Shown in pieces: positions 14,001-54,467 of a stretch of 64,000 nt of DNA (within the stretch, counting starts at the first letter, position 1; the number at the start of each line of letters is the position of its first letter). Made by a program: the position numbers and the translations under genes. A model generated the notes under the pieces. That model saw only the letters and a list, made by a program, of their open reading frames with translations, was not told the DNA's origin and searched no databases. The stretch is from IMG/VR virus record IMGVR_UViG_3300031951_000003, positions 248,001 through 312,000 of that record; one strand, written 5' to 3'.

Positions 14001-14199
14001 TGGTTTTTTCCTCCATGTTTTTTATAGTTAATAGAATTTCTTTTTCGTTTTTTCCACTTTTGTAATATTCATAAACTTTTGAACTCAGTTCATCTTCAAA
14101 AATTAACATATCACTTTTTCCATAATAATCTTTAAGACTATTGTTTTCAAGTGCTTTCAATGTGTATTCAGCTGAAATAATTCTTTTGTTGAATCCCAT
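13987..14199 (-). CDS. hypothetical protein
   Basis: TATTTTTG box 4 nt before the ATG. Confidence 0.7.
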   Translation of the reverse strand: MGFNKRIISAEYTLKALENNSLKDYYGKSDMLIFEDELSSKVYEYYKSGKNEKEILLTIKNMEEKTNEVY

Positions 14200-14217
14200 A
14201 AAACAAAAATAATAATT

Positions 14218-14997
14218 TTATAGTTCAGAGTCAAAATTATTTATTTTTTCTAAATTAACAATCTGAAAAACGTATGCCATTATTTTTCTTTTCATTATGG
14301 GTAAGAAAGTTTCCTCCATTGGGAAATCATTCGTGGACTTCAATTCAAAAATAGGTAAATCTTTAAAATGTTCTTCTTCATTCCAAGTTGAGAAGGTTTC
14401 TATAATTGAGTTCAACGTTACATCACTTGGTAATGTGTTGTATATGAGGTTTAAATAAATTTTACTATTGAAATTCTCGTTCTCGGGTTTTTTTATTTCA
14501 TATTCCCAAATGAAAATTTCATTCAAGGATTTTTTGAAATAGTAAACATACCCCTTCCCCGCGGCTAAATTATTTTTATTTCTTTTGAGACTGAGGTCCA
14601 TGTGGTCGTAAGCCATGTTCCAAATTGACTTAGCCATATTGAAGGCGTCAAATAATTTGTTACCAGAATATTTGATTGTCTTGTCAAGTTCATTGGATTC
14701 AGAATCACTTAATTGTCTTGGTTTTTTTTGAACCAATTCTTTAAGAAGAATCTCATCATCACATGACTCGAATGTCTTATTTGTAAGTAGTAACCTATTT
14801 TCTTTGACAAGTGATTGTATGTTAGCCAAATGAAGTGAAAGTTCTACAAAGTCAGGATAAATTTGTAGATTGTTGAAATTGTTTTCGCACTTCTGAAGGT
14901 AATCCAATAAAGTATATTTGTTGTATTCGAAGTCAACAGGTTTTTTCAACATCCAATCGGGCTTCAATCTGAACGGTTGTTTCTTTTGTCTAGCCAT
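14218..14997 (-). CDS. hypothetical protein
   Basis: 259-aa ORF. Confidence 0.8.
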   Translation of the reverse strand: MARQKKQPFRLKPDWMLKKPVDFEYNKYTLLDYLQKCENNFNNLQIYPDFVELSLHLANIQSLVKENRLLLTNKTFESCDDEILLKELVQKKPRQLSDSESNELDKTIKYSGNKLFDAFNMAKSIWNMAYDHMDLSLKRNKNNLAAGKGYVYYFKKSLNEIFIWEYEIKKPENENFNSKIYLNLIYNTLPSDVTLNSIIETFSTWNEEEHFKDLPIFELKSTNDFPMEETFLPIMKRKIMAYVFQIVNLEKINNFDSEL

Positions 14998-15023
14998 AAC
15001 AAAAAGATAATTTATTATAACTA

Positions 15024-16784
15024 TTAATCAATTCTCATTACGTAAAACCATTGGTCTTGAATTTTCACCTCATCAGCATTCCCATCGTAAGAATTAAGTG
15101 TTTGCCCAAATCCATCAGCATCTATCACCCCTTGTATAAATTCATCTTTGTCTATAAATTGTTCCCAGTCAATCCCATGCTCATTTAAAAAACCTTCGGG
15201 GTCTCTCATAACATCATCAACTAATTCATCAACTTTTTCTTCAACCAAATCATCAGGGAATTCTCCATCAGGGTCGTTCTCAATATCATCGATTTCATCC
15301 TGATATTCTACTATCAATTCACTTAGTTCATCTATTTTATCTTGAATCGAATCATCATCTCCCCCGTCCCCAATTAGTTCCTCAAATCTCTCAATTTCTA
15401 CTTCGGTTCTTTTTATTCTCATTTTGAGAATTTCGATTTCTTCTTTTTGTTTGGAAGATAATTGTCTCTCACTTTCATCCAAATAAACCTCAGGATTTTG
15501 ATATACATCGTCCCCTAAGTAGTCTCTTGCATAGTCCGCGACTTGTTCATCGTCAATGAAACCTCTCGCAAACCCACTACTGAAACCGCCATAACCAATA
15601 TCGTCAATTAATGAATCCACCCTTTCCTCACAACTTGATTGCATTTCACCCTCCGTTCCCACCGCATATTTTCTATCACTCAAACCTGCATCTATTACCT
15701 CAAATTCCGTGCAATCATAATACTCTCCTGTGGGTATTATGTTGTATACATCAATTTTTTCCTCTAATTCATTCAACTCATCCTCTAAGTCACTGATTTC
15801 GTCTAAAATGTCTGTTTCTACTTCCTCACTATTATCGTATTGGTTTTTAAGTCTCTCGATTTCATCTTTAAGTCTCTGAATTTCTATTCTGTCCTCATTT
15901 GTCAACGCTGAAACGTCACTTGTGTCAACCAACCAATCTAAAAGGGCGTGGGCTTTCAAACCCTCTTCAGGACAATCGGGACCAAGAGCCCATTCATTTT
16001 CCATCCTTCTCTCCTCAGCATCGTCTCTCATTTGCCTTAATATTCTTGCTTGTCTTAGTGCTTCTTGTCTCTCTTTTTCTTTTTTCGCGGCTTCTTTGTC
16101 ATTAAAAATCTTTATTTGTTCAGAATACTCTGAGTTCATGTATTCAGTTATCTGATTAATTATCTCATTGTATTTAGCGGTGCCCACATGAGCAGGATAT
16201 ATATTTGTTTGTTGGTCTGTGGCCGTGAAAAAACTTTTGTTACCGTCAAATTTGTTGAGCAAGGCTACTTTGTAGAATGGGTCAGATGAATCAGCACTTC
16301 TATCTAAAATATAAAACAATTTACCCTCTGTGTTATAATAATTGAATTGGTGGTCTGAACTTGCCACGGTGCACCACTTTGTTCCTTTACCGTAATAGCA
16401 TGAAGCCTGATGTGTTTGAGGATTCACAACAAAAAATCTTCCATCATCGAAAACAACTTTACCACCCTCAACTTGTTTATAATCTCTTCTTGGTCTGTTC
16501 GCATATTTTTGTAATTCATCACTGAGTTCGGAAACACTTTTATATGAATTAATATCAGTTTTAGGTAGGTTTGATGAAATCTTATCAAATTCTCTAAGTT
16601 TTCTGACTAAGTCTTGAAAGTTAGATTCAAAGTTCATCACCTCAAAGTTTTTGGCAACCCAATCCCAAAATTTTTGAGGAACGTTATCAATGATTTTTTT
16701 CAATTGCTCCTCAGAAAATTTCGTTCCATACTTAGCTTTGAGTTCTTCTGATTTGTTTTCTAATATTAATTCTAAAATTTTCAT
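15024..16784 (-). CDS. PcfJ-like 'YG..T.WCT' domain fused to a very acidic C-terminal region; probable head-packaged protein
   Basis: HQASCYYGKGTKWCT motif; D/E-rich C-terminal half; start at ATG 16784 (MKILELILE). Confidence 0.7.
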   Translation of the reverse strand: MKILELILENKSEELKAKYGTKFSEEQLKKIIDNVPQKFWDWVAKNFEVMNFESNFQDLVRKLREFDKISSNLPKTDINSYKSVSELSDELQKYANRPRRDYKQVEGGKVVFDDGRFFVVNPQTHQASCYYGKGTKWCTVASSDHQFNYYNTEGKLFYILDRSADSSDPFYKVALLNKFDGNKSFFTATDQQTNIYPAHVGTAKYNEIINQITEYMNSEYSEQIKIFNDKEAAKKEKERQEALRQARILRQMRDDAEERRMENEWALGPDCPEEGLKAHALLDWLVDTSDVSALTNEDRIEIQRLKDEIERLKNQYDNSEEVETDILDEISDLEDELNELEEKIDVYNIIPTGEYYDCTEFEVIDAGLSDRKYAVGTEGEMQSSCEERVDSLIDDIGYGGFSSGFARGFIDDEQVADYARDYLGDDVYQNPEVYLDESERQLSSKQKEEIEILKMRIKRTEVEIERFEELIGDGGDDDSIQDKIDELSELIVEYQDEIDDIENDPDGEFPDDLVEEKVDELVDDVMRDPEGFLNEHGIDWEQFIDKDEFIQGVIDADGFGQTLNSYDGNADEVKIQDQWFYVMRID

Positions 16785-16871
16785 CAAGTTTTCTTTAATA
16801 AATATCTTTTTTTAATTATAATTGGTTGGAAGTAATATTTATATAAATAAAAACTAAAAAATCTTTTTACC

Positions 16872-17078: not shown

Positions 17079-17104
17079 AAGGGACAAAATTTGTCCCTTT
17101 TTTT
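17079..17104 (+). terminator. intrinsic terminator
   Basis: AAGGGACAAA-A-TTTGTCCCTT followed by a T run. Confidence 0.75.
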
Positions 17105-17117
17105 GTATTTATATGAT

Positions 17118-18128
17118 ATGGAAAATGAATATTCTATACGTGGTTTCTTGGAATCATTCAATAATAATGACTTGGATGTAAAAAAATATTTTGGTGATTA
17201 TGAAACATGGTTCAATGTGTTGAAGAAAAGAGGTTTGATGGGTGAAATCGACCCGAAGAATGCTGCGGGTTCCGAAGATTGGCAAAATGAATATCTTTTG
17301 TGGTTATACGATAATGATAGAGAAAAATATTACAAATGGATGAATGAGATTTTATCTGATGTTGTAATAGAAGGTAAAGATGTTTATTGGCAAGGTGACA
17401 GAGTTGATTTAGCAATTTTATTTTGTGATGATAGAAGAGACGGTCCGAGTAGAGATACAATTGAAAGTATTTTAGTTGGTGAGGATGTTTTCGAACCTTA
17501 TTGGGACACAACCGATGATGTTTACAGAGATGTCATTGAAGAACTAACCAAAGAGAATTTAGAAATTTTTAAAGAAAGGATTGTTAAAGAATTATCAGGT
17601 CAACAGTTGAGTCCTGATACGGAAGAAATGGAGTTAATAGCCACTGAGCAAGGACATGAAAATTATTGGACTATAGATTCAGAAAATGTGACGAGAATAA
17701 TCGACGATGAGGAGTCCATGAATAGTTTACTAAAAGATGAGCTTGCCGATGTAAAATCTGATTTATACTCTGTTCATTCTAATTCATATAATTCTGCTTA
17801 CGAAAGTGAGGTATATAATAGCATTTTCAATAAATTGGATGAATATTTCAACACCGAAAAAAAACAATGGATAAATGTTCCCCACCCATACAAAAAAGAA
17901 ACTGTGGTTGAAAAATTCAAAATACCAATATATGATTTCGAAGGTATCGTGAATGATTTTTTACATTCTAACAAAGGTTATGGAAATTCAGGAACACTTG
18001 ATTACCATGGAAGTTTTATAGAAATAATTAGGGAAGAAAAGGATTGTCTCAGATTGTGGTTTCCTGATTACCCTGACTCAAGATTGCTTGACAAAAACAT
18101 AAATGAAATATTTTCTGATTATTTTTAA
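17118..18128 (+). CDS. acidic hypothetical protein
   Basis: Start revised to ATG 17118, 5 nt after TATTTAT. Confidence 0.8.
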   Translation: MENEYSIRGFLESFNNNDLDVKKYFGDYETWFNVLKKRGLMGEIDPKNAAGSEDWQNEYLLWLYDNDREKYYKWMNEILSDVVIEGKDVYWQGDRVDLAILFCDDRRDGPSRDTIESILVGEDVFEPYWDTTDDVYRDVIEELTKENLEIFKERIVKELSGQQLSPDTEEMELIATEQGHENYWTIDSENVTRIIDDEESMNSLLKDELADVKSDLYSVHSNSYNSAYESEVYNSIFNKLDEYFNTEKKQWINVPHPYKKETVVEKFKIPIYDFEGIVNDFLHSNKGYGNSGTLDYHGSFIEIIREEKDCLRLWFPDYPDSRLLDKNINEIFSDYF

Positions 18129-19754: not shown

Positions 19755-19783
19755 AAAAAAGGGATTTTTAAATCCCTTTTTTT
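19753..19783. terminator. bidirectional terminator between convergent genes
   Basis: A-run, GGGATTT-TT-AAATCCC-type hairpin, T-run. Confidence 0.8.
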
Positions 19784-22110
19784 CCGCTTGCTAACATTTC
19801 CAATTTTTCTAATTTCCTTTCATGGAAATCTAAAAGGGTGGATTGTTCTTTGATTGCCTCTAAACAAGCTGATATAATCGTTTCAAATCTTATTGATAAC
19901 ATTGTGGTTTCTGGGTCTTCATAAACGAGTTCAGGAAATACCAACTGCAACTCTTGTGCAATAAAACCTATCTGAAGTAACTCGGGTCTTTCATCATCTT
20001 TTATTAGATGGTAGGAAACACCTCTAGTCTTTAATATTTTGTCCAAACTATCTGTAATTGGTCTGATATTAGTTTTGAACCTTAAATCCGATGGTCCAGG
20101 TGCACCTGATGCACCTTGTGCCCCTGTTGGTCCTGTGCCACCTTGTGGACCAGTTCCACCACCTCCACCTTGAGCACCTTGTGGACCTGTTCCTCCTGTT
20201 CCACCACCAGTCCCTTGAGCACCTTGATTACCCGTAGGACCGGTTGGTCCTCCAGGACCTTGAGCACCTTGTGCACCTTGGTTTCCATTACCTTGTGATG
20301 GACCTTGGGCTCCTTGAGAACCAGTTCCACCTCCTCCACCAGGAGGTCCTGTGTGACCTTGAGCTCCCTGTGGACCTCGGTTACCCGTTGGTCCGCCAGG
20401 ACCCTGAGCACCTTGTGCTCCGCCAGGACCCTGAGCACCTTGTCCACCTTGAGAACCTTGAGCTCCTTGAGCTCCTGTTGCACCACCACCACCTTGAGAA
20501 CCTTGTCCTCCCTGTGAACCTTGGGCTCCTTGGTTTCCACCACTGCCTTGAGCTCCTTGCGCACCTTGTCCTCCTGCCGGTCCTTGTGCTCCTTGGTTAC
20601 CTTTACCACCTTGAGCTCCTTGCGCACCTTGTCCTCCTGCCGGTCCTTGTGCTCCTTGGGCTCCTCCTGGGCCTTGAGCTCCTTGCGCACCTTGTCCTCC
20701 TGTTGGTCCCTGAGCTCCTTGGTTACCTTTACCACCTTGTGCTCCTTGAGCACCTTGTCCTCCTTGAGAACCTTGTGAACCTGTGGCACCTACAGGCCCC
20801 TGTGCTCCTTGTGCTCCCTGTCCACCTTGTGAACCTTGACCACCTTTGGCACCTTGTGAACCTTGTCCTCCTTGAGCTCCTTGTCCACCTGTTGGTCCTT
20901 GTGCTCCTTGATTACCACCCGAACCTTGCGCTCCTTGAGCTCCTTGTCCACCTGTTGGTCCTGTAGCACCCTTACCACCTTGAGAACCTTGTCCTCCTTG
21001 AGCTCCTTGTCCACCTGTTGGTCCTTGAGCTCCTTGATTACCACCCGAACCTTGCGCTCCTTGAGCTCCTTGTCCACCCTGTGAGCCTTGGGAACCTGTG
21101 GCACCCGCAGAACCTACTGGACCTTGTGCTCCTTGGCCTCCCTGCGAACCTTGTGAGCCCGTGGCCCCTTGTGCACCTACTGGCCCTTGAGCTCCCTGTC
21201 CACCTTGTGAACCTTGGGAACCTGTGGCTCCTGCTGAACCAACGGGACCCTGAGCTCCCTGTCCACCTTGTGAACCTTGTGAACCTATGGCACCTTGTGA
21301 ACCTTGTCCACCTTGAGCTCCTTGTCCTCCCTGTGAACCTTGGGAACCTGTAGCTCCTTGTGACCCAACTGGTCCTTGTGCTCCTTGACCTCCTTGTGAC
21401 CCTTGGGAACCAACCGCTCCCTGAGAACCTGTGGCACCTTGAGCACCTTGACCTCCTTGTGAACCCTGAGAACCTGTAGCACCTTGTGACCCTACCGGCC
21501 CTTGAGCACCTTGTCCACCTTGTGAACCCTGAGAACCGACCGCTCCCTGTGAACCTGTGGCACCTTGAGCACCTTGACCTCCTTGTGAACCCTGAGAACC
21601 AGTATCGCCTTGTGCACCTATTGCACCCTGAGCACCTTGACCACCTTGTGCGCCTTGTGGACCTACAGCACCTTGGGAACCTTGTGAGCCAGTAATACCT
21701 TGAGCCCCTGTTGGACCTTGTGCTCCTTGACCCCCTTGTGAACCTTGAGCACCTTGACCACCTGTCACTCCCTGGGAACCTTGATTTCCTTGAGCACCTT
21801 GTCCCCCTTGAAAACCAATACTACCTTGAGCACCAGTTGGTTCTCTATTACCAACCCATCCTGTAGAGTTGATAAGTGTTCCTGCTGAATTTTTTAAACT
21901 AGTTGTTATCTTGAGGTTACTATTGTAAGTTACAAATGAAGGTTTATCACTTCTCCAAGCAAGATAAACAATATTACTATTATCTGTCCAATGCAAATGT
22001 AGTAGTGGTGAATCGTCTTCAAGCTTCAAATATGTTGAGGTTGAGCCAGAATCAACGAATTCGACCGTGGGAAACGCATAATCAGGATATATTATTATAT
22101 TTTCAGACAC
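19768..22110 (-). CDS. collagen-like fibre chain C with C-terminal intramolecular chaperone (peptidase S74 type)
   Basis: ~580 aa of Gly-X-Y; SDLRFKTNI cleavage motif; IGFIAQE. Confidence 0.9.
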
Positions 22111-24532
22111 TTAAATTATCTTTTAAAATTTTTATTCTCTCCATTATTGAGATTATTCTTTTCTGTTGTTCTTGAAGTGCACCAATACCCAAACTTACCA
22201 TAAGACCATATTCAACTGATTTAAAGCCCTCCTCGTCTGTCCAAACAACTTCTGGGACGATATCTTCAATTTGCTGTGCAATAAAACCTATTGTTTCACC
22301 AGTAAATGCACTTGGAAGAGATATTGCACGGTTCATTGATATTTTAGGATGGTCAACCCATTCGAATCTAACACCCTCAATACCTTTAACTTTTTCTAAT
22401 ACATTTGTTAAGGATTGAATATTATCTTTAAGTCTTTGGTCTGAAGGTGGACCCTGAGCTCCTTGAGCTCCTTGACCTCCTGTTGGACCAGTTCCACCCT
22501 GAGGACCTGTAGGTCCTACGTTACCTTGAGCACCTTGACCACCTTGGCCCCCACCTGAACCTGTAGCACCTTGGGCACCTTGACCCCCTTGACCACCACC
22601 CGAGCCTTGAGCCCCTTGGGCTCCCGTAGCTCCTGGTCCTCCACCAGGCCCCACTGCTCCTTGGGCACCTTGTCCTCCTGTTCCTCCTGTAGGTCCTGTT
22701 GGTCCCTGTGCTCCTTGGAATCCTGTTGCACCTCCCCCTCCTGTTCCACCTTGAGCCCCAACAGGACCCTGAGCGCCTTGAGCTCCCTGAGCACCACCCT
22801 GTGCTCCTTGAGCACCTGTGGAACCACCTCCACCTTGGCTTCCTTGAGCACCTGTAGTTCCACCTTGAGCTCCTTGAGCACCTGTTGGTCCTTGAGCACC
22901 TTGGTTACCTTGTGCACCTTGGTTACCACCTTGAGCTCCTTGGGCTCCTTGTGAACCTTGGACACCAGGAGCACCTTGTGCACCCGTATTTCCTCCTTGG
23001 GCTCCTTGAGCTCCTTGTGAACCTTGGACACCAGGAGCACCTTGTGCACCTGTTGAAGCTCCTTGAGCTCCCTGAGCCCCTTGAGAGCCCTGAACACCAG
23101 GAGCTCCCTGTGCTCCCGTTGAACCACCTTGAGCTCCTTGGGCTCCTTGGGCACCCTGATTACCTGTCGCACCTTGGGCACCTGTTGAACCACCTTGAGC
23201 ACCCTGTGAACCTTGTGCCCCTTGTGCTCCAGTATTACCTTGAGCTCCTGTATTGGCTCCTTGTGCTCCTTGAGCACCTTGTGGTCCTTGTGCACCTTGG
23301 TTTCCTTGTGCACCTGTATTGGCTCCTTGTGCTCCTTGAGAGCCTTGAGCTCCTTGAGCACCTGTATTACCTTGAGCTCCTGTATTGGCTCCTTGTGCAC
23401 CTTGAGCACCTTGTGGTCCTTGTGCACCTTGGTTTCCTTGTGCACCTGTTGAAGCACCCTGTGCACCTTGCGCTCCCTGTCCTCCTTGTGAGCCTTGACC
23501 ACCTTGAGCACCTGTTGTTCCTCCTTGGGCTCCTTGTGCTCCTGTTCCACCTTGAGCTCCTTGACCTCCTTGTGCCCCCGTGGTTCCCCCTTGGGCTCCT
23601 TGAGCACCCTGTCCTCCTTGTGAACCTTGAGCTCCTTGGGCTCCTGTTGTTCCTCCTTGTGCTCCTTGAGAACCTTGTGCACCTTGTGCTCCAGTTGAAC
23701 CCTGAGCACCTGTTGTTCCTCCTTGAGCTCCTTGAGCTCCTTGTCCTCCTTGTGCCCCCTGTGCACCCTGAGCACCTGTTGTTCCTCCTTGGGCTCCTTG
23801 TGCACCTTGTCCTCCTTGGGCTCCTTGTGCACCCTGAGCACCTGTATTAGCTCCCTGAGCTCCTTGTGAACCCTGTCCTCCTTGTGCTCCTTGAGCTCCT
23901 TGAGCACCAATTGTTCCACCTTGAGCACCTTGAGCACCTTGTCCTCCTTGTGCACCTTGTGAACCCTGAGCACCTGTGTTAGCTCCTTGAGCACCTTGAG
24001 CTCCTTGACCACCTTGAGCTCCTTGACCACCTTGAGCTCCCGTATCCGCTCCTTGAGCTCCCTGTGCTCCCTGTCCACCCGTAGCACCTTGAGCTCCTTG
24101 AGGTCCTATCGAACCTTGTGAACCTTGAGCACCTACATTTCCTATTGCTCCCTTAGCACCTTGAGAACCTTGCGCTCCTTGAGCACCTATTGACCCCTGA
24201 GAGCCTGTAGTTCCTGAAGCACCTTGTGCTCCTTGAGCACCGGTAAATCCAGATATACCCTCAGCAGGTCCTACCCATTCGCCAACTTCATTAATCATTT
24301 CTATACCACCCACATACAATCCATATATTCCTCCGGTGACCTTTGCACCATCAACGAGTAATTCAGCTCCGATAGTTGCTATGTTACTTTTTGTTGTTGA
24401 TGAAACTTGGATATTTCCAGAACCATTAACAGATAATTGTATTTTGTCCGCGGATGAAATCCCTTCAAATTCCATATGAGGGTTAGGGTTTCCACCACTT
24501 TTACCATTGGGATATATTATAACGTCAGACAT
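22103..24532 (-). CDS. collagen-like fibre chain B (periodically interrupted) with S74-type chaperone
   Basis: ~605 aa of Gly-X-Y with about 20 Gly-X-Y-Z stutters; SDQRLKDNI; IGFIAQQ. Confidence 0.9.
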
Positions 24533-27176: not shown

Positions 27177-27183
27177 ATAAATA
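27177..27183 (-). promoter_or_regulatory. putative phage late promoter (TATTTAT) for the collagen operon
   Basis: The same motif precedes most structural/head-type genes in the window. Confidence 0.6.
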
Positions 27184-31342: not shown

Positions 31343-31372
31343 CAAAGATACAGTATTAATTTGAATTACAAA
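31343..31372 (-). promoter_or_regulatory. Bacteroidota sigma-A-type promoter
   Basis: TTTG-N18-TATCTTTG. Confidence 0.65.
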
Positions 31373-32986: not shown

Positions 32987-33030
32987 CTACCACGAATTTA
33001 TTAATAAATATATTGATTACACAAAAATAA

Positions 33031-33870
33031 CTAATAATTCAATATCAAGAGCTCTTCACCCATATTTTGTTTCGTCCCTTTTTTCGCAGCAGCTGCTTTA
33101 GCAAACTTCTTCTTTTCCCATCTGAATCTATCTGTTGAATACCATTGACTTAAAAGGTCAAAATCGTAGTAAGATAAACTAAACTTACTTTGGACTGAAT
33201 TCAACACATTTGCCAATCTTTCGTGGTCTGCTCTGTCGAAATCATGGTTGGAATAGTAATTTTCAGTTTTCCAATATGGTGGGTCCAAGTAAATATAAGT
33301 TGACGGGGAGTCGTATTTCTCTATAACCTTTTGGAAATCCATATTTTCAACATGAGTAATCTTATTAAAGTGTTCGACCCATTTTGGATTAGATAGTTTG
33401 TCTCTGAAAGACAAATATTTTGAACGATACTTTCCCTTCAAATCTATAAAGTTAGAAGTTTCAGGTTTACTTCCACTGAACACTTGAGTGACAATGTAAA
33501 CGTATTTTGCAGCAACTTCGTAGTCAGGGTAATTTATAGTAAATCCCGATGAAAATAATTCAGTTTGATACTCTCTGAATCTATCCTTGTAACTTATGTC
33601 TGTAACTAATTTACCAAACTCTTGAACCGGTATGGTGTCCAAAACTCTTTGGAGTTCAGCAGGATTCTGAACACATTGAAATAGATTGTAGTTTAGTGGG
33701 TTGAAGTCATTGTAGACCACTCGTTTGAGGTTTGTGAATTTTTCTAAATTCATGTTGAAATAACACCAAAACATTCCCCCGAATGTTTCGACATATGTTT
33801 CCATATCCTCAGGATAGTATTCGACTATCCATTTTCCAATTTTTGATTTTCCTCCGATATAACTTAACAT
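33031..33870 (-). CDS. dam: Dam-type DNA adenine methyltransferase
   Basis: YIGGKS, YVETFGG, VYNDFN, YLDPPY. Confidence 0.9.
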   Translation of the reverse strand: MLSYIGGKSKIGKWIVEYYPEDMETYVETFGGMFWCYFNMNLEKFTNLKRVVYNDFNPLNYNLFQCVQNPAELQRVLDTIPVQEFGKLVTDISYKDRFREYQTELFSSGFTINYPDYEVAAKYVYIVTQVFSGSKPETSNFIDLKGKYRSKYLSFRDKLSNPKWVEHFNKITHVENMDFQKVIEKYDSPSTYIYLDPPYWKTENYYSNHDFDRADHERLANVLNSVQSKFSLSYYDFDLLSQWYSTDRFRWEKKKFAKAAAAKKGTKQNMGEELLILNY

Positions 33871-33906
33871 ATAAGAAATATAATAAAAAAAATCAAAAAA
33901 GCAAAT

Positions 33907-34083: not shown

Positions 34084-34093
34084 AATTATAAAT

Positions 34094-34234
34094 ATGGCAT
34101 GTAGTAGTTGTAAATCAAATCGTCCAATAAATAGAGTTAAATGGGGCGTGTTAATTTTAGGAAGTTATATTGTTTTCTCATCTGTTTACGGAACAATCGA
34201 AATATTCAAAATTATAATAGAATTTTTTAAATAG
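34094..34234 (+). CDS. small MACSSCK membrane protein (46 aa)
   Basis: N-terminal CxxC plus one TM; not in the ORF track. Confidence 0.65.
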   Translation: MACSSCKSNRPINRVKWGVLILGSYIVFSSVYGTIEIFKIIIEFFK

Positions 34235-36542: not shown

Positions 36543-36727
36543 TTCGTAATAAGATATGTTATTATGTAACTCAACGATAAACCTAAGAAGATAAGTTCCC
36601 TGTTACTATAAACCATTGGTTTTGGTTCTTTTTGTAACAGGGCGCTTAAAAATTTTGTGACATTTTTTAATGTTACTAATATTGTGAAAACAAATATAAA
36701 AATATATATCGTTTCAATATTATGCAT
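36539..36727 (-). CDS. small two-TM membrane protein
   Basis: Start revised to MHNIE. Confidence 0.65.
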   Translation of the reverse strand: MHNIETIYIFIFVFTILVTLKNVTKFLSALLQKEPKPMVYSNRELIFLGLSLSYIITYLITK

Positions 36728-36902
36728 TATCCTCTGTCTTTTTGTGTTCAAGAATTTCACCTCTGAGTTTCTGTAAAAGAGCTTTCAATTCTTGTGCAGA
36801 TTTTCTTGCTCTTGTTCCCGCACTCTTATTTCCTTTGAAAAACTTTGTTGTGTCAACTGAAAGTAGTTCGGTCAATTCTTTGATTTTTTCTAATGTTTCC
36901 AT
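36720..36902 (-). CDS. histone H1-like Hc1-family protein
   Basis: KFFKGNKSAGTRARK motif. Confidence 0.8.
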   Translation of the reverse strand: METLEKIKELTELLSVDTTKFFKGNKSAGTRARKSAQELKALLQKLRGEILEHKKTEDNA

Positions 36903-39277: not shown

Positions 39278-39303
39278 TATGTGTGTTTTTAATATAAATA
39301 TCT

Positions 39304-43705: not shown

Positions 43706-44503
43706 TTACATGTAGTCGAACAAACTACCCGTTTCATTCCTAAGTTTTCTGAGGGCTTTTTCTTTGATTTGTCTAACCCTTTCCTTAGTTAAATCAAAGT
43801 CATTACCAATATCTTCTAATGTTCTTGTTGAGCCAGATAACCCGAAATAATCTTGGATGATTACCTTTTCTCTTTCATCGAGAACATCGAGAAGTGAAAG
43901 TAATTTATCTTTAAGTGTTTGCTCTGAAGAAAGTCCTGAGTCCGCACTTTCAGCATTTGGATTTGGAACAACATCCAAAAGCGTATCTCCCTCTTCGTTA
44001 AGTGGGCTATCCAAGTTCACAATAGATGGTAGGTTGAGAAACTTCTCAGGAAGTTCAGTCCCCACCTTGTCAAGTTCTTTTTTCGCCTTATGTAGTTCTT
44101 GAACCACATTTACTGGTAGTCGAATTGTTCTAGCATTTTCATTCAAGGATTGAAGTATGGATTGTCTAATCCACCACACAGCGTATGATATGAATCTAAG
44201 ATTTTTTGACCAATCAAAATTCTCAATCGCTTTCATAAGACCATAATTACCTTCAGCGATAAGGTCAGGTAAATCTAACCCTTGGTTTTGATATTGTTTG
44301 GAAACAGTAATCACAAACCTTAAGTTACCCTCGAGAATTTCTTTTTTTATTTCTTCCTTCTCTTGGATTGAGATTCTACCTGATAACATTTTTCTAGAAA
44401 GTTCTCTTTCTCTCTCTACCGTCATTACCTTAAGTTTTCTTACTTCTTTAAGGTAGGCGTTAATTTCTTCCTGATTAATTGGGATTACACTTTTTTCCTT
44501 CAT
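43706..44503 (-). CDS. sigma-70 family RNA polymerase sigma factor, Bacteroidota RpoD-like (no region 1.1)
   Basis: NLRFV...QGLDLPDLIAEGN.GL.KA; RFISYAVWWIRQSI; TLEDIG..FDLTKERVRQIKEKAL. Confidence 0.93.
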   Translation of the reverse strand: MKEKSVIPINQEEINAYLKEVRKLKVMTVERERELSRKMLSGRISIQEKEEIKKEILEGNLRFVITVSKQYQNQGLDLPDLIAEGNYGLMKAIENFDWSKNLRFISYAVWWIRQSILQSLNENARTIRLPVNVVQELHKAKKELDKVGTELPEKFLNLPSIVNLDSPLNEEGDTLLDVVPNPNAESADSGLSSEQTLKDKLLSLLDVLDEREKVIIQDYFGLSGSTRTLEDIGNDFDLTKERVRQIKEKALRKLRNETGSLFDYM

Positions 44504-44506: not shown

Positions 44507-45025
44507 TTAATTTTTACTATAACTCTTTAATATATCTTTTTCGAACTCTGTAAGATTTTCAAACCCTTTGTCAATCATCTTGTCCAAAATTTGGTCTAAG
44601 GATGGTTTAGGAAACAGGTTATTCTTTTCACCCAAAAGTAATGCCACAAAATCGTCATCTTCCTCTTCGTCCATGAAATCTAAATTCCTTTTAATTCTAT
44701 TAAGGTCGATATTCATCTCAACGTCATCACTTGAATTTTCTAAGTCTAAAAGATGACTTTCTATTTCTTTCGGCATAGACAATGTCATATTGTCATGTAA
44801 TTCTGTCAGAATAAATGCTTCGGTTATACCATAGAGAATTCCACGGATGTATTCAAATATTTCACTTTTTTCAACCTCAGAGGCAAAATGGAATATCAAA
44901 ATACCGTTTGTGTGTTGGAATTTCATGTGAGGTGAGTCAACAATAGGGGTTAATGATAGTGCTAACTCTTGACACATCTTCTCGTTTTCGAATTTACCAA
45001 TTACTGATAAAATGTATTTTTTCAT
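44507..45025 (-). CDS. hypothetical protein with DUF6576-like C-terminus
   Basis: LDQILDKMIDKGFENLTEFEKDIL. Confidence 0.6.
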   Translation of the reverse strand: MKKYILSVIGKFENEKMCQELALSLTPIVDSPHMKFQHTNGILIFHFASEVEKSEIFEYIRGILYGITEAFILTELHDNMTLSMPKEIESHLLDLENSSDDVEMNIDLNRIKRNLDFMDEEEDDDFVALLLGEKNNLFPKPSLDQILDKMIDKGFENLTEFEKDILKSYSKN

Positions 45026-45039
45026 AAAGCAAATATAGG

Positions 45040-45579
45040 TTAAACTCTCTTGGATAATCCAACTATTTGATAAAAATCTTTTTTTCCTTCACAATACTCT
45101 TTTACCAAAGTAAGTAGCCCGCGAAACATAAAAGCATCATCTGATTGTTTTTCACACTTTGAAAAAAGTTCAACAAATGCTGTAATTGTTTCAACTGTAT
45201 AATACCCATGACCCCTAAGTTGAGAGTGTTTATTACCCATAACTTGTGGGTGTTTCAAATCGTATGTATTTCTTTCTTGAATAGATGAGAACTTTTCGGA
45301 CTCATCGTAGATTTTTATGAGGTCATTAACAAAACTATATAGATAGTTCATTTTGAAAACTGAACTATGAGACCCTTTAACCAATAAGTCAACTATCCAA
45401 TGTGTGTGAGATGGGGTTCTCAACCTTTTTCCCTCTTCTTTATACTTAACCACAAAATCAAGCTCGGGGTTTTGACCTCGTTCGCCTTGATAAATAGCAA
45501 CTTCTGTAACTAAGTCAGTTTTCCAAACTTTGATTGGGTGATGTTCAACCCCTATTTTCTTGAATGTTAAATGTTTCAT
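45040..45579 (-). CDS. hypothetical protein
   Basis: 179-aa ORF coupled to the glycosylase gene. Confidence 0.75.
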   Translation of the reverse strand: MKHLTFKKIGVEHHPIKVWKTDLVTEVAIYQGERGQNPELDFVVKYKEEGKRLRTPSHTHWIVDLLVKGSHSSVFKMNYLYSFVNDLIKIYDESEKFSSIQERNTYDLKHPQVMGNKHSQLRGHGYYTVETITAFVELFSKCEKQSDDAFMFRGLLTLVKEYCEGKKDFYQIVGLSKRV

Positions 45580-46052
45580 AGATATACTCTTCCTTTTTTT
45601 CCTGAATGTTGTTCATACCATTTACCTTCATTATCCAACCATACGTAAGGGTCTGAAGGGTCTTCGGACCACCCATATTTTTGATAAAATTCAGGTTCTT
45701 TTTTCAAAAGATTGGCACGGTGAGATGAATGAAATCTTTCGTTTCCAATGAATGGTGGTATAATAACATCATTCTCAATGTATTGTTCAAAACTCATCGT
45801 ATTCTTGAATCCTCGACAAATCCATTCTGCAATTGAATAATTCATATACAATTTCAACGCAGGGACATAGTCTCTCCACATAACCGTGCAAGGATGGTTT
45901 AACCAACCTTTGTATGGTGTTCCATCTAACTTAGGCCTACGGGTGATTGCTGATATTATTTGATAAGTTTCAACTCTTTGTTTACCGAGACGTTTGTTGT
46001 CGAGGGATTTAAGAGATTTTCTCATATCGGAATATGGTAAGAAAATTTGCAT
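45576..46052 (-). CDS. pyrimidine-dimer DNA glycosylase / MSMEG_6728-like protein
   Basis: MQIFLPY...LDNKRLGKQRVE...NHP...MW...HSSHRANLL; start revised to 46052. Confidence 0.85.
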   Translation of the reverse strand: MQIFLPYSDMRKSLKSLDNKRLGKQRVETYQIISAITRRPKLDGTPYKGWLNHPCTVMWRDYVPALKLYMNYSIAEWICRGFKNTMSFEQYIENDVIIPPFIGNERFHSSHRANLLKKEPEFYQKYGWSEDPSDPYVWLDNEGKWYEQHSGKKGRVYL

Positions 46053-46080
46053 GCTGCAATGATACTGAATATTTTTACAA

Positions 46081-46851
46081 TTACAAAATTTGGTCCAACT
46101 TAATAATAAGTTCATTTTTGGGTATACTTCTTGGACCTGTAGTATCACCTGAACTAAATTGAATTTGTGATATTAAACGTTGAGCTGTTTGAGGGTCTTC
46201 GACTCTAAGAAAATAATGTGAAGTAATTGATACATCTGTATCAGTGAAAACATCTCCAGCATTGATACCAACTCTTCTGATTGCTAAATTCGCATGTTGT
46301 TTTGTGGTGAAAGTAAATTTTGTGGGAGAAAGTTTTATTTCTTTCTCTCTAAGAACTTCGGTTTTTTTCAAGATAACCCAAACACATGGGACCATGAAAT
46401 CTTTTCCTTCGAACGTAAAAATATCCTCAGTTAAATCCTGAATTAATGAAACCTCAAAGTTGAGAGGAATCTTGTCAATCATTGACCTTTTTTTGAAACC
46501 TTTGGGTAATATGAATGCGATTGTGTCTGCGTGAAGACAACACTTTTTTATAAATTTTAATGCAAGACTTGAATTTCTCCCAAATGGAGGATTACCAAAG
46601 AAAAGCACTTTACGATTCCCCAAGAAACTTAAATCCTTAGTCAAAAAATTACATTGTTCTATATCATCAGACTTAGGTTCAATGTCGTAGGCTATTTTGT
46701 CTTGGTGTTCCGCCAAATGAAAAAAAACACCCTCTCCTGCCGATGGCTCTATGATTGTATCATAATCAGTTAGATTCAGAGTCTCTAAACACCTTCGAGC
46801 GACCTCAGATTTTGTATAAAATTGGTCTAAACCATACTTACTTTTTGACAT
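46081..46851 (-). CDS. DNA adenine methyltransferase (gamma class)
   Basis: DQFYT, IIEPSAGEG, GNPPFG, FILP. Confidence 0.88.
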   Translation of the reverse strand: MSKSKYGLDQFYTKSEVARRCLETLNLTDYDTIIEPSAGEGVFFHLAEHQDKIAYDIEPKSDDIEQCNFLTKDLSFLGNRKVLFFGNPPFGRNSSLALKFIKKCCLHADTIAFILPKGFKKRSMIDKIPLNFEVSLIQDLTEDIFTFEGKDFMVPCVWVILKKTEVLREKEIKLSPTKFTFTTKQHANLAIRRVGINAGDVFTDTDVSITSHYFLRVEDPQTAQRLISQIQFSSGDTTGPRSIPKNELIIKLDQIL

Positions 46852-47356
46852 AATCTAAAAAAGTTTCCAAGTTTTTGTAAGAAACCGCAGATTGTATTCT
46901 ACGTTGGGTTTTATGGTCTCTTTTGAATCTAGGTTGAACGATTCTTTCTTCACCCCACTTTTCTTTCCACTCTTTTACTTCAGACTTCCAAGTGGTATCG
47001 TAGTCATAACTATTGGAAACAACATTTTTAATCCAATGTTTAAGTTCTTCGAAGTGTTCCCAAGTGAATAACTCTTTCCATTTTTCAACGTCTACTAATA
47101 TAACTTTTTCTTCAACAATGTTTGATTTTTTACCTTTCCAAACACCATACATTAAATAGAAGTCTTTATCTCTCGATACATTATTGAATATATCGGCCAA
47201 GGGAATTTCCGAATTTTGTTTGAAGGTTTTAACTACACATGGGGTTCCATCTTGACGATAGGCATCCCAAATACCCGTGTAGTTATCATCTGAAGATAGG
47301 TTATATCTTTCACAGAGTTGTCTTTGGTAATCAAAACCGTGACCTTGTCTTTCCAT
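46838..47356 (-). CDS. putative type II restriction endonuclease
   Basis: Overlaps the methyltransferase; RQGHGF N-terminus and a D...V.K pattern compatible with PD-(D/E)xK. Confidence 0.5.
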   Translation of the reverse strand: MERQGHGFDYQRQLCERYNLSSDDNYTGIWDAYRQDGTPCVVKTFKQNSEIPLADIFNNVSRDKDFYLMYGVWKGKKSNIVEEKVILVDVEKWKELFTWEHFEELKHWIKNVVSNSYDYDTTWKSEVKEWKEKWGEERIVQPRFKRDHKTQRRIQSAVSYKNLETFLDYVKK

Positions 47357-47374
47357 ATCGCAAATGTATGGCTT

Positions 47375-51120: not shown

Positions 51121-51121
51121 C

Positions 51122-52130: not shown

Positions 52131-52161
52131 ACAGTTTTTATTTAAAATATAGTAAAAATTA

Positions 52162-53004: not shown

Positions 53005-53908
53005 AATAGAATTCTTCGATGTTACCTTTCAAATCACAAACGTCTTTGTCTTTAGGTAATTTAACAATTTTTATTTTATTATACAAACGACCTCCATTCA
53101 GTTCGTGATACATTTTGAGACCGTCATCCCAAGCATCACCATCGACACATATTGTAATATTTCCATTTGCCCTTGTATAAAGGGTTTCGAAAATGAGTTT
53201 ACTCATTTTTTTACCAAGCATCACTAACGGGTTTGGAAGAAAGAATGAGTCAAAGGCACCTTCTACGAGGTATATTTCCTTATCCCAATCAATTAGTTTT
53301 TCATTGAATATGATTTCGTCTTTAGGGACTGAAGCAGGATTTTTGTATTTCATCTTTTTATTAACCCATGCTCTACCAACAAAATAATTCAAGACACCTT
53401 CTTTGTCAAAAGACGGTATAATTACTCTATATGCAAAATCTCCTTGAACCGTATATCCAATCTTATATTTTTCAATCATTTCATCTGATATACCACGAGA
53501 TTGAAGGTATTTGTAAGCTTCAATATGAGGAATGAATCTAGGATTTGAATCTTTAAATAAAGTGAACCCTTCAGGTAGTCTTAATCTGAGTCTTTTTTTA
53601 TCCTCCTGTTTGAACTCTTCGGGTTTGATAAGATTGTAAACTTTCTTTTGTTGTTTTGTTGCATGTCCATCGAAAAGTTTACCCAAGGGTCCGTGTGTTC
53701 CGTGAGTTTCACCACAAGCCCAACATTTGTAAACGTGTCGGATATAGTTAATCTCAAGGTTTCCTTTACCGTCTCCTTTATCCAAACCTTTTTCATCCGC
53801 ACAGACAGGGCAGTCAAAAGATATTTGCCCCTTTGATTCATAGTGCTGATTAGGTTCACCTAAAAAATCACTAAGGAGTTCAACTAAAACCTCTATTTCA
53901 TCACTCAT
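52991..53908 (-). CDS. dnaG: DNA primase (zinc finger plus TOPRIM)
   Basis: CPVC...CWAC, YLQSRGI, RVIIP, KYKNP, LVEGAFD, DGD. Confidence 0.9.
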   Translation of the reverse strand: MSDEIEVLVELLSDFLGEPNQHYESKGQISFDCPVCADEKGLDKGDGKGNLEINYIRHVYKCWACGETHGTHGPLGKLFDGHATKQQKKVYNLIKPEEFKQEDKKRLRLRLPEGFTLFKDSNPRFIPHIEAYKYLQSRGISDEMIEKYKIGYTVQGDFAYRVIIPSFDKEGVLNYFVGRAWVNKKMKYKNPASVPKDEIIFNEKLIDWDKEIYLVEGAFDSFFLPNPLVMLGKKMSKLIFETLYTRANGNITICVDGDAWDDGLKMYHELNGGRLYNKIKIVKLPKDKDVCDLKGNIEEFYYEIK

Positions 53909-54066
53909 ATGTCGATATCTTTAGGTGCTTCTGCCACAACGTGTTTTCTCCACCATTTTTTTACCGGATGATTTTCATCAAAATTTTTTTCTATGAAACC
54001 AGCAAAAATGAAGAAAACGACCGTTATAATAAGAAGCGTGACCCAAATGTAAAAAAATATTATCAT
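53905..54066 (-). CDS. small membrane protein (53 aa)
   Basis: ATGA coupling at both ends; not in the ORF track. Confidence 0.65.
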   Translation of the reverse strand: MIIFFYIWVTLLIITVVFFIFAGFIEKNFDENHPVKKWWRKHVVAEAPKDIDI

Positions 54067-54431
54067 TTCCAAATAATTTTCTTAATCAAATCATAATAGG
54101 GTATTTCAATATCGAAATACTTTAAGTAAGTTTTAACATCAAAAAAAATGTTTCGTCTTATGAATCGATTGACTTTAATTTTTGAAACTCTTCCCCCATT
54201 TGGAAAAACGTCAGTCATGACTGAAGAACTATACCAATCTTTTTTCCTATTATAGTGAACGAAAATTTGCCCTTCGAATATTATATCTACTTCTTCGAGG
54301 TGAGAGTATGAACGGTAGTTTTTGATTGTAAAAGTTCCTTTGAGTTGTGAGTTGGATATGGGTATCTTGTTACCAAATTTTTTTACAACTTTGGAAATTG
54401 ACTTTGTGTGTGGTGTTCTCAACATGTGCAT
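54063..54431 (-). CDS. hypothetical protein
   Basis: Directly behind a host promoter. Confidence 0.7.
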   Translation of the reverse strand: MHMLRTPHTKSISKVVKKFGNKIPISNSQLKGTFTIKNYRSYSHLEEVDIIFEGQIFVHYNRKKDWYSSSVMTDVFPNGGRVSKIKVNRFIRRNIFFDVKTYLKYFDIEIPYYDLIKKIIWK

Positions 54432-54435
54432 ACCA

Positions 54436-54467
54436 CAAAGATATGCTTTGTTCTTTAAATCACCAAA
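54436..54467 (-). promoter_or_regulatory. Bacteroidota sigma-A-type promoter for the replication operon
   Basis: TTTG-N20-TATCTTTG. Confidence 0.75.

What the first reader, a model, noticed from the sequence alone, without database searches (positions are those of the whole stretch)
14199..54443. Systematic leaderless mRNAs: promoter box exactly 4 nt before the start codon
Seen: an 8-nt TAnnTTTG box or a one-mismatch variant ends exactly 4 nt upstream of the ATG for genes starting at 14199 (TATTTTTG), 14997 (TATCTTTT), 33870 (TATATTTC), 45025 (TATATTTG), 46052 (TATCATTG), 47356 (TACATTTG) and 54431 (TATCTTTG). The late box shows the same geometry (7-mer plus 5 nt) at 6812, 17118, 57307 and, as the variant AATTTAT, 1069. 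Established: the Bacteroidota TSS lies a few nt after the -7 box. Inference: the A of ATG is +1, so many phage mRNAs would be leaderless and could escape a shut-off of canonical initiation.
Basis: partly seen in the sequence, partly recalled or inferred. Interest (0 to 1): 0.6.

Follow-up and report, generated by a model that had tools for sequence, protein, structure and literature searches.

The report
Leaderless genes in Bacteroidota jumbo phage
In a 321-kb freshwater phage that infects Bacteroidota, and in its relatives, promoter boxes sit so close to many start codons that about one gene in seven should be transcribed without any leader; this is a known way of expressing genes, here predicted from sequence alone for an uncultured phage family.

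Summary
All eleven sites read as described, and the predicted peak exists genome-wide. The window lies in a 321,139-bp phage with terminal repeats. Its genes carry two upstream motifs. One is the host-type Bacteroidota promoter (TTG-N19-20-TAnnTTTG). The other is a phage-specific 7-mer, TATTTAT, with no -35 partner. TAnnTTTG ends exactly 4 nt before the start codon in 7 genes (shuffles give 0.4). TATTTAT ends 4-6 nt before it in 50 genes (shuffles give 0.8). Distances of 7-11 nt are almost empty, and a second mode lies at 12-17 nt. Two diverged relatives (304 and 309 kb) show the same two-state pattern, and orthologues keep their state. In the leadered promoters a conserved A sits exactly where the ATG's A sits in the short class. 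Published Flavobacterium data put the transcription start 4-5 nt after the box. The best reading is therefore leaderless mRNAs for about 15% of genes, or 44% of promoter-proximal genes. No RNA data exist, so start sites are inferred. The idea of escaping a translation shut-off has no support. One Cytophagales genome shows the same host-type geometry, and the pattern persists in a relative that lacks the phage's ribosomal protein bS21. Thermus phage phiYS40 is a precedent.

The parts
14204..14211 (-). Host-type -7 box TATTTTTG. It ends 4 nt before the ATG at 14199 (gene 13987-14199, 70 aa). The -33 TTG lies at 14232-14234, spacer 20.
   Evidence: the start agrees with the public gene call
15002..15009 (-). 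One-mismatch -7 box TATCTTTT. It ends 4 nt before the ATG at 14997 (gene 14218-14997, 259 aa). The -33 TTG lies at 15029-15031, spacer 19.
   Evidence: the start agrees with the public gene call
33875..33882 (-). One-mismatch -7 box TATATTTC. It ends 4 nt before the ATG at 33870 (Dam-type DNA methyltransferase, 33031-33870). The -33 TTG lies at 33902-33904, spacer 19.
45030..45037 (-). -7 box TATATTTG. It ends 4 nt before the ATG at 45025 (DUF6576 protein, 44507-45025), the first gene of the operon that holds the phage sigma factor. Most orthologues in relatives carry the box 14-20 nt upstream instead.
43706..44503 (-). Phage sigma-70-family factor, 265 aa, RpoD/RpoS-like, with regions 1.2, 2 and 4. 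It lies 3 nt downstream of the 45025 gene. It is the candidate reader of the TATTTAT promoters.
46057..46064 (-). One-mismatch -7 box TATCATTG. It ends 4 nt before the ATG at 46052 (pyrimidine-dimer glycosylase, 45576-46052). The -33 TTG lies at 46084-46086, spacer 19. About 20 diverged orthologues carry canonical TAnnTTTG at exactly 4 nt, with varying spacer sequence.
47361..47368 (-). -7 box TACATTTG. It ends 4 nt before the ATG at 47356 (gene 46838-47356, 172 aa). No -33 TTG was found.
54436..54443 (-). -7 box TATCTTTG. It ends 4 nt before the ATG at 54431 (gene 54063-54431, 122 aa). The -33 TTG lies at 54464-54466, spacer 20. A second in-frame ATG lies two codons downstream.
6800..6806 (+). 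Phage-specific box TATTTAT, 5 nt before the ATG at 6812 (gene 6812-7159). It lies in a 14-bp divergent intergenic region.
17079..17112 (+). Terminator hairpin at 17079-17099 with its T run, followed directly by TATTTAT at 17106-17112, 5 nt before the ATG at 17118 (gene 17118-18128). Two relatives keep the same layout.
57313..57319 (-). TATTTAT, 5 nt before the ATG at 57307 (gene 55064-57307, 747 aa). The orthologue in G002 has it at the same distance; in G001 it lies at 7-11 nt.
2572..2578 (+). TATTTAT, 6 nt before the ATG at 2585 (gene 2585-4720).
34088..34094 (-). TATTTAT, 4 nt before the ATG at 34083 (gene 33907-34083, 58 aa).
1057..1063 (+). Variant AATTTAT, 5 nt before the ATG at 1069. 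It cannot be told from chance, because one-mismatch 7-mers show no positional peak.
10928..10934 (-). Example of the leadered state: TATTTAT 14 nt before the ATG at 10913. Other leadered sites in the window are 16798-16804 (d=13), 33004-33010 (d=17), 39294-39300 (d=16) and 27177-27183 (d=20, tail fibre). Host-type leadered boxes lie at 2492-2499 (d=15) and 31343-31350 (d=18).

Best explanation
The phage uses the host RNA polymerase with two kinds of promoter.
1. The ordinary Bacteroidota sigma-A promoter, TTG-N19-20-TAnnTTTG. It sits in front of early-looking genes, including the operon of the phage's own RpoD-like sigma factor.
2. A phage-specific element resembling a -10 box, TATTTAT, with no -35 partner. 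It sits in front of structural and many other genes. It is probably read by the phage sigma factor; this step is inferred.

In both kinds, transcription should start on an A about 5 nt after the box. Genes come in two discrete states.
- In the first state the A of the ATG is that start nucleotide, so the mRNA has no leader and must be translated from a 5'-terminal AUG. This applies to 57 of 385 genes, which is 44% of genes with a recognisable promoter.
- In the second state the ATG lies about 8-12 nt further on, behind a short A-rich leader.

Intermediate leaders of 1-6 nt are avoided, as expected if they serve neither initiation route.

Shown here: the motifs, their positions, the statistics and the conservation. 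Inferred: the transcription start sites, the sigma assignment and the mode of translation.
For: 1. The host-type boxes are canonical promoters. They have a -33 TTG at 19-20 nt. Published start sites in F. johnsoniae lie 4-5 nt after TAnnTTTG, with the box at -12 to -5.

2. The positional peaks are sharp.
- TAnnTTTG at d=4: 7, 10 and 10 genes in G000, G001 and G002, against 0.3-0.5 in shuffles.
- TATTTAT at d=4-6: 50, 29 and 44 genes, against about 1 in shuffles.
- d=7-11 is nearly empty in G000 and G002 (2 and 1 genes) but holds 10 in G001. A second mode lies at 12-17.

3. In 120 leadered TATTTAT promoters, A is conserved at +5, +6 and +7 after the box (85%, 91%, 86%). In 51 leadered sigma-A promoters, A is 73% at +5, the known start position. 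These are the positions the ATG's A takes in the short class.

4. Orthologues at 52-62% protein identity keep their state: 15 of 21 in G002 and 7 of 15 in G001. Most that switch jump to d=13-15 (3 of 36 land in between). Spacers vary: 44 distinct spacers among 49 genes, which fall in 47 protein families.

5. The denV-like gene keeps the box at exactly 4 nt in about 20 relatives, with different spacers and different upstream neighbours. In 822 distinct upstream regions from 80 related loci, d=4 has 28 cases, d=5 has 3 and d=0-3 has none.

6. The features expected of leaderless genes are present.
- ATG is the start in 152 of 154 short-class genes.
- There is no upstream in-frame ATG in 55 of 57.
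- A pyrimidine stands at -1 in 83%, against 53% in genes without a motif.
- The first 42 nt are less structured (p=3e-5).
- Shine-Dalgarno cores occur in only 1-3% of genes.

7. TATTTAT behaves as a DNA-level signal. About 70% of copies lie in the 9% of the genome that is non-coding. It is depleted in coding sequence on both strands. It often abuts a terminator. It stands on both strands in 33-bp divergent intergenic regions. It shows no positional peak in two Bacteroidota genomes or in crAss001.

8. The phage encodes a sigma factor. Pfam detects no RNA polymerase subunit.

9. Reading a -10-like signal about 10 bp before the start codon as a leaderless gene is established practice (PMC3160421 and PMC12340547).
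Against: - No transcription start is mapped. No RNA run holds this phage.
- For TATTTAT the start position is inferred only from internal consistency.
- Its spread of 4-6 nt means that with a rigid start site some mRNAs would carry a 1-2-nt leader or would begin inside the ATG.
- The sigma assignment is a guess. The factor has a region 4, yet no -35 element is seen.
- A divergent phage polymerase missed by Pfam cannot be excluded.
- As far as I found, efficient leaderless translation has not been shown directly in Bacteroidota. Start-site maps there give only 3.7-5.5% short leaders.
- One predicted leaderless gene starts with GTG (G000 230045), which probably reflects a wrong start call.
- The public gene call for 46052 is longer than mine.
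Confidence: 0.7

Rival explanations
1. The promoters are real but the mRNAs are only nearly leaderless. The polymerase starts 1-3 nt before the ATG, or at several positions, so the mRNAs carry tiny leaders and are translated poorly or by another route.
For: The TATTTAT-to-ATG distance spreads over 4-6 nt. F. johnsoniae start sites lie 4 or 5 nt after the box. No start sites are mapped.
Against: The host-type class is sharp at exactly 4 nt: 28 cases against 3 at 5 nt, across 80 loci. T at -1 followed by A at +1 is the preferred pyrimidine-purine start context, and 83% of short-class genes have a pyrimidine there. The conserved A window in leadered promoters spans the same three positions, +5 to +7. 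This suggests that the polymerase picks the A.
Confidence: 0.15
2. TATTTAT is an RNA-level signal inside longer transcripts rather than a promoter. It could be a translation enhancer placed like a Shine-Dalgarno sequence, perhaps read by ribosomes carrying the phage's bS21, or it could be a processing site.
For: A distance of 4-6 nt resembles Shine-Dalgarno spacing. The phage encodes bS21. Chen et al. proposed that phage bS21 selects phage mRNAs.
Against: - The distance distribution is bimodal with an empty gap, unlike a ribosome-binding site.
- The motif sits right after terminators and in 14-33-bp divergent intergenic regions.
- It is also depleted on the antisense strand of genes.
- The relative G002 lacks bS21 yet has 44 such genes.
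- Late genes have no other candidate promoter motif.
Confidence: 0.07
3. The pattern is an artefact: AT-rich short intergenic regions combined with wrongly placed start codons produce an apparent pattern.
For: Intergenic gaps are short (median 25 nt) and AT-rich. My gene caller is home-made.
Against: - Dinucleotide shuffles give 0.4 and 0.8 genes against 7 and 50 observed.
- One-mismatch and reversed motifs are flat.
- Starts were chosen without looking upstream, and they agree with public gene calls and with Pfam alignments that begin at residue 1-4.
- The same pipeline gives d=19-30 in crAss001 and a flat profile in a Cyclobacteriaceae genome.
- The pattern is conserved in orthologues.
Confidence: 0.03
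4. It can hold together with the best explanation. The leaderless state lets phage mRNAs keep being translated after the phage, or a host defence, shuts off canonical initiation.
For: There is a precedent in Thermus phage phiYS40. Most of its middle and late mRNAs are leaderless, and infection raises IF2 and lowers IF3 (PMC3594737). [quoted passage not shown]
Against: - Nothing here points to a shut-off. No phage IF3 was found.
- About half of the TATTTAT genes, including portal, tail sheath and tail fibre, are leadered.
- Early host-type promoters show the same two states.
- One Cytophagales genome has the same geometry in about 4% of its own genes, so leaderless mRNAs would not be unique to the phage.
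Confidence: 0.1

Closest known systems
Bacteroidota primary-sigma (sigma-ABfr) promoters: -33 TTTG and -7 TAnnTTTG
   Same: The phage has the same two elements with the same 19-20-nt spacing. T follows the box and A stands at +5.
   Different: In hosts most such promoters give leaders averaging about 33 nt (F. johnsoniae; medians 24-32 nt in other species), and only 3.7-5.5% are leaderless. In the phage, d=4 is the single commonest distance.
Leaderless ('TA-led') genes recognised by a -10-like signal about 10-12 bp before the start codon, in Actinobacteria and Deinococcus-Thermus (PMC3160421, PMC12340547)
   Same: The signature is the same: a promoter -10 element abutting the ORF, an ATG start and no Shine-Dalgarno sequence.
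   Different: Here the genome is a phage of Bacteroidota. The motifs are TAnnTTTG and a phage-specific TATTTAT rather than TANNNT.
Thermus phage phiYS40, whose middle and late mRNAs are leaderless (Sevostyanova et al. 2007, as summarised in PMC3594737)
   Same: It is a large lytic phage in which a major share of later transcripts are leaderless and are read from -10-type promoters by the host polymerase.
   Different: The Thermus host itself uses many leaderless mRNAs. In phiYS40 the start sites were mapped and changes in initiation factors were measured. Here everything is predicted, and only about half of the TATTTAT genes are in the leaderless state.
T4-type late promoters: TATAAATA at -10, no -35, read by a phage sigma (own knowledge)
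   Same: Late structural genes are preceded by a single AT-rich 7-8-mer resembling a -10 box, with no -35. The phage has a T4-like portal and tail sheath.
   Different: The sequence differs (TATTTAT). The only sigma found is RpoD/RpoS-like with a region 4, unlike gp55. T4 late mRNAs have leaders with Shine-Dalgarno sequences.
bS21-encoding freshwater Bacteroidetes phages (Chen et al. 2022, PMC9723584)
   Same: It comes from lake metagenomes. A bS21 gene lies on the opposite strand within the structural block, next to the portal gene. The bS21 gene's closest bacterial relatives are Bacteroidota.
   Different: That paper does not mention promoters, leaders or sigma factors. GC content here is 35.2%, against 31.0-33.7% in that paper.

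Membership tests
Bacteroidota sigma-A promoter | -7 element TAnnTTTG | tested here: met
   Four exact and three one-mismatch boxes lie at the named window sites. About 30 exact boxes lie in intergenic regions genome-wide.
Bacteroidota sigma-A promoter | -33 TTTG/TTG about 19-21 nt upstream of the -7 element | tested here: met
   The spacer is 19-20 nt at five of the seven window sites, 22 nt at 45025, and absent at 47356. Most intergenic boxes have it.
Bacteroidota sigma-A promoter | Transcription starts 4-5 nt after the box | not testable with these tools
   No RNA run is on record. Indirect support: A is 73% at +5 in 51 leadered promoters.
Leaderless (TA-led) genes | -10-like signal with a sharp positional peak about 10-12 bp before the start codon, above shuffled controls | tested here: met
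   7-10 genes (host-type box) and 29-50 genes (TATTTAT) per genome, against 0.3-1.3 in shuffles.
Leaderless (TA-led) genes | The mRNA 5' end coincides with the A of AUG | not testable with these tools
   No RNA data exist.
Leaderless (TA-led) genes | AUG start codon and no Shine-Dalgarno sequence | tested here: met
   ATG is the start in 152 of 154 genes. Shine-Dalgarno cores occur in 1-3% of genes.
phiYS40-type leaderless late programme | Most middle and late transcripts are leaderless | tested here: inconclusive
   49 TATTTAT genes are in the leaderless state and 46 in the leadered state in G000. Portal, sheath and tail fibre are leadered.
phiYS40-type leaderless late programme | Infection shifts initiation factors (IF2 up, IF3 down) | not testable with these tools
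   I only checked whether the phage has its own IF3, and it does not.
T4-type late promoter | A single -10-like element with no -35 | tested here: met
   The logo of 82 sites shows information only in A-TATTTAT-T.
T4-type late promoter | Read by a gp55-type sigma that lacks region 4 | not tested
   The only sigma found has regions 2 and 4. I did not search for gp55 itself.
bS21-encoding Bacteroidetes phages (Chen et al. 2022) | A bS21 gene on the opposite strand within the structural gene block | tested here: met
   bS21 lies at G000:108720-108872 on the + strand, among minus-strand genes that include the T4-like portal at 109615-111453.
bS21-encoding Bacteroidetes phages (Chen et al. 2022) | Genome of 293-331 kb with GC 31.0-33.7% | tested here: inconclusive
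   The genome is 321 kb, which fits. GC is 35.2%, slightly above the range. Relatives have 31.0% and 31.6%.

The most novel reading that the evidence does not exclude
This widespread family of lake phages runs a dedicated translation programme. Its own sigma factor places +1 on the AUG, or 8-12 nt before it behind an A-rich leader. These unusually short 5' ends are what let phage-modified ribosomes (through bS21 or another factor) or 70S initiation favour phage mRNAs over host mRNAs, which carry leaders of about 25-30 nt. That would give the hypothesis of Chen et al. 2022 a concrete mRNA feature to act on, and it would be the first such case in Bacteroidota.
Probability: 0.12. Interest if true: 0.8.

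Novelty: new member of a known kind. Interest (0 to 1): 0.5.

Why it matters
Bacteroidota start translation without Shine-Dalgarno pairing, and how their phages get their mRNAs translated is largely unknown.

- These 300-kb phages are abundant in lakes. The stretch I searched occurs in runs from 16 studies.
- They have no cultured member.
- The only published functional idea about them concerns their ribosomal protein bS21.

A sequence-level map of their two promoter classes, together with the two-state leader rule (no leader, or 8 nt and more), gives three things.
1. Direct predictions for existing lake metatranscriptomes.
2. Better start-codon annotation. Public calls misplace at least one start.
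3. Compact promoter parts for Bacteroidota genetics.

It also shows that leaderless expression is not confined to Actinobacteria, Deinococcus-Thermus and their phages.

Tried and rejected
- **RNA evidence.** I did not use read laying, because DNA contigs cannot show a transcription start.
- **Close annotated relatives.** A nucleotide search of the phage collection found nothing. The sigma protein finds only hits below 40% identity.
- **Phage-encoded RNA polymerase.** Pfam Rpb2_6, Rpb1_2 and the T7-type RNA_pol family found nothing. The T7-type model rang in no control genome either, so that blank says little. PHROGs named no polymerase among 18 large proteins.
- **E. coli-type promoters.** They are not enriched: 77 against 74 in shuffles.
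- **Link between bS21 and the leaderless state.** Rejected as a requirement. G002 has no bS21 by HMM or by tblastn, yet has 56 genes with leaderless geometry.
- **'A general trait of Bacteroidota phages'.** Rejected. The eight sigma-A-type promoters of crAss001 lie 19-30 nt from their start codons.
- **'Host-type leaderless promoters are phage-specific'.** Rejected. A Cytophagales genome has 13 of 338 genes with that geometry.
- **Functional enrichment of leaderless genes.** Pfam named too few of 20 proteins to say anything.
- **Antisense depletion of TATTTAT.** It is real but overstated by my shuffles, because the reverse complement contains TAA.

Full report
**What the window is**

The window is bases 248,001-312,000 of a 321,139-bp IMG/VR virus record with direct terminal repeats and 35% GC. 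Lake and freshwater metagenomes from 16 studies hold the 10-kb stretch of it that I searched. None of the holders is an RNA run.

The phage has a T4-like portal, a tail sheath, collagen-like tail fibres and a DNA polymerase. It also encodes a sigma-70-family factor and a ribosomal protein bS21. The closest bacterial relatives of that bS21 are all Bacteroidota.

Size, habitat and the position of bS21 match the bS21-encoding freshwater Bacteroidetes phages of Chen et al. 2022. That paper says nothing about promoters, leaders or sigma factors. No cultured relative is in the phage collection.

**Checking the observation**

Most window genes lie on the minus strand, and the finding's coordinates are the A of each ATG. 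Every box reads as described. Five of the seven host-type boxes also have a TTG 19-20 nt upstream, which is the Bacteroidota -33 element.

I called genes with a codon-usage model that does not look upstream. It gave 385 genes covering 93% of the genome. Public gene calls on an identical contig agree with the starts at 14199, 14997, 45025, 47356, 54431, 6812 and 17118.

For 46052 the public call is 21 codons longer. However, Pfam Pyr_excise aligns from residue 1 of the short form, and all orthologues begin at that ATG.

The exact box TAnnTTTG ends 4 nt before the start codon in 7 genes. Dinucleotide shuffles give a mean of 0.37 and a maximum of 4 in 200. Distances of 7-14 nt are nearly empty, and a second group begins at 15-21 nt.

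Counting the first ATG of every ORF of at least 60 aa gives 9 at d=4, and the reversed motif is flat.

The 'late box' is far more abundant than the finding suggests.
- TATTTAT precedes 112 genes.
- It lies at 4, 5 and 6 nt in 20, 22 and 8 genes (shuffles give 0.77).
- It lies at 7-11 nt in 2 genes.
- It lies at 12-17 nt in 32 genes.
- One-mismatch versions are flat, so the AATTTAT at 1069 is not supported.

**Replication and conservation**

A search with the sigma protein found 80 related loci at 63-100% identity. I fetched two complete relatives. G001 is 304 kb with 66% sigma identity, and G002 is 309 kb with 78%.

Both show the same two-state distributions for both motifs. The host-type box stands at d=4 in 10 genes in each. 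TATTTAT stands at d=4-6 in 29 and 44 genes.

Reciprocal-best orthologues, at a mean of 52-62% identity, keep their state. TATTTAT-leaderless genes stay leaderless in 15 of 21 cases in G002 and 7 of 15 in G001. Leadered genes stay leadered in 16 of 21 and 13 of 16 cases. Only one orthologue pair changed promoter type.

Where the state changes, the distance usually jumps between 4-6 and 13-15 nt; 3 of 36 orthologues land in between. The spacer sequence is free: 44 distinct spacers among 49 genes, which belong to 47 protein families.

The denV-like gene has TAnnTTTG at exactly 4 nt in about 20 diverged relatives, with different upstream neighbours. The orthologues of the 45025 gene mostly carry the box 14-20 nt upstream. 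Across 822 distinct upstream regions from the 80 loci, d=4 has 28 cases, d=5 has 3 and d=0-3 has none.

**Where transcription should start**

In F. johnsoniae the -7 element occupies -12 to -5, with 4 or 5 nt to the start site (PMC6847099). A box followed by 4 nt and ATG therefore puts +1 on the A.

An internal check agrees with this. In 51 leadered host-type promoters, A is 73% at +5 after the box. In 120 leadered TATTTAT promoters, A is 85%, 91% and 86% at +5, +6 and +7. This signal is anchored to the box, not to the ATG. In the short class, those are exactly the positions the ATG's A occupies.

The short class also has the other expected features.
- ATG is the start in 152 of 154 genes.
- No upstream in-frame ATG exists in 55 of 57 genes.
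- A pyrimidine stands at -1 in 83% of genes, against 53% in genes without a motif.
- The first 42 nt are less folded (p=3e-5).
- Shine-Dalgarno cores are almost absent, at 1-3% of genes.

**Is TATTTAT a promoter?**

- It has no -35 partner.
- It often follows a terminator hairpin directly, as at 17079-17112.
- It stands on both strands in 14-33-bp divergent intergenic regions.
- It is concentrated in the 9% of the genome that is non-coding, and it is depleted in coding sequence on both strands.
- It precedes the portal, sheath and tail-fibre genes.
- It shows no positional peak in two Bacteroidota genomes or in crAss001.

The phage's RpoD/RpoS-like sigma lies in an operon behind a host-type promoter, both here and in relatives. 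That suggests a cascade from host sigma to phage sigma to TATTTAT genes. This assignment is inferred.

**Controls that temper the claim**

I ran the same pipeline on 400 kb from each of two Bacteroidota chromosomes. A Cyclobacteriaceae genome had 1 of 396 genes with the host-type box at 4-5 nt. A Cytophagales genome had 13 of 338, against 0.47 in shuffles.

The host-type leaderless geometry is therefore not special to the phage. It matches the 3.7-5.5% of short leaders seen in published start-site maps. What is special is the TATTTAT class. It brings the total to 57 of 385 genes (15%), or 44% of the 130 genes with a recognisable promoter.

crAss001, another Bacteroidota phage, has its eight host-type promoters 19-30 nt from the start codons. 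The trait is therefore not general among Bacteroidota phages.

**The shut-off idea**

There is a precedent. Most middle and late mRNAs of Thermus phage phiYS40 are leaderless, and infection shifts IF2 and IF3 (PMC3594737). Nothing here supports a comparable shut-off.
- The phage has no IF3 of its own.
- Early and late promoters both show the two states.
- The most abundant structural genes are leadered.
- G002 lacks bS21 by HMM and by tblastn, yet has 56 genes with leaderless geometry.

**Verdict**

The leaderless reading is the best explanation, with confidence 0.7, but it rests on geometry, statistics and conservation rather than on mapped RNA ends.

It is a new member of a known kind. Reading a -10 element that abuts an ORF as a leaderless gene is established practice (PMC3160421 and PMC12340547), and leaderless late genes are known in Thermus phages. 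New here are the host phylum, the phage-specific TATTTAT promoter and the clean two-state rule across an uncultured but abundant phage family.

I did not use read laying, the large protein searches, structure prediction or complex prediction.

Noticed in passing
whole phage genome (G000); in the window for example 10928-10934, 16798-16804, 39294-39300: TATTTAT, usually as A/G-TATTTAT-A/T, is the dominant upstream motif of the phage. It precedes 112 of 385 genes and has no -35 partner. In the leadered state it is followed by a conserved AAA at +5 to +7 and a short A-rich leader of about 8-12 nt, much shorter than typical host leaders.
   Followed up: yes
window 43706-44503 (-): A phage-encoded RpoD/RpoS-like sigma factor with regions 1.2, 2 and 4, scoring below every NCBIfam cut-off. 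It is conserved at 63-100% identity in at least 80 viral contigs and is always preceded by a DUF6576 gene with a host-type promoter.
   Followed up: partly
G000:C1:108720-108872 (+), outside the window: A ribosomal protein bS21 gene on the opposite strand within the structural block, next to the T4-like portal. Its closest bacterial relatives are Cytophagales, Cyclobacteriaceae and Lewinellaceae at 51-61% identity. The relative G002 has none.
   Followed up: partly
L238-L257 (G006, Cytophagales chromosome, 1.0-1.4 Mb); G007 (Lewinellaceae): A Cytophagales genome has 13 of 338 genes with TAnnTTTG 4-5 nt before the start codon (shuffles give 0.5). A Lewinellaceae genome shows many copies of the form TACCTTTG-CGGC/CGCC/CCCC-ATG. 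Some Bacteroidota lineages may use leaderless genes more than the model species do.
   Followed up: partly
window 45576-46148 (-): The public gene call for the pyrimidine-dimer glycosylase starts 63 nt too far upstream (179 aa, overlapping its neighbour by 35 nt). Pfam, the orthologues and the promoter box all point to the ATG at 46052 (158 aa).
   Followed up: yes
window 19768-27156 (-): Three tandem collagen-like tail-fibre genes of 780, 809 and 874 aa. Their repetitive sequence opens many spurious ORFs on both strands. The first gene is driven by TATTTAT 20 nt upstream of 27156.
   Followed up: partly
window 34227-35147 (-), 36720-36902 (-), 12198-12647 (-), 7156-9312 (-): Precomputed Pfam hits on the public gene calls name a full DnaJ chaperone (J domain, zinc finger and C-terminal domain), an Hc1 histone-like protein of 60 aa, an APS-kinase/zeta-toxin-like protein, and a TseH-like protein of 718 aa.
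   Followed up: no
G000 about 199-217 kb, outside the window: An array of small paralogous genes, each preceded by a terminator hairpin, a TTTTTGGG(A) stretch and TATTTAT. The array mixes leaderless and leadered states.
   Followed up: no
G000 230045 (-), outside the window: The only host-type box at d=4 that is followed by GTG rather than ATG. It is probably a wrong start call, or else an exception to the rule that leaderless genes start with AUG.
   Followed up: no
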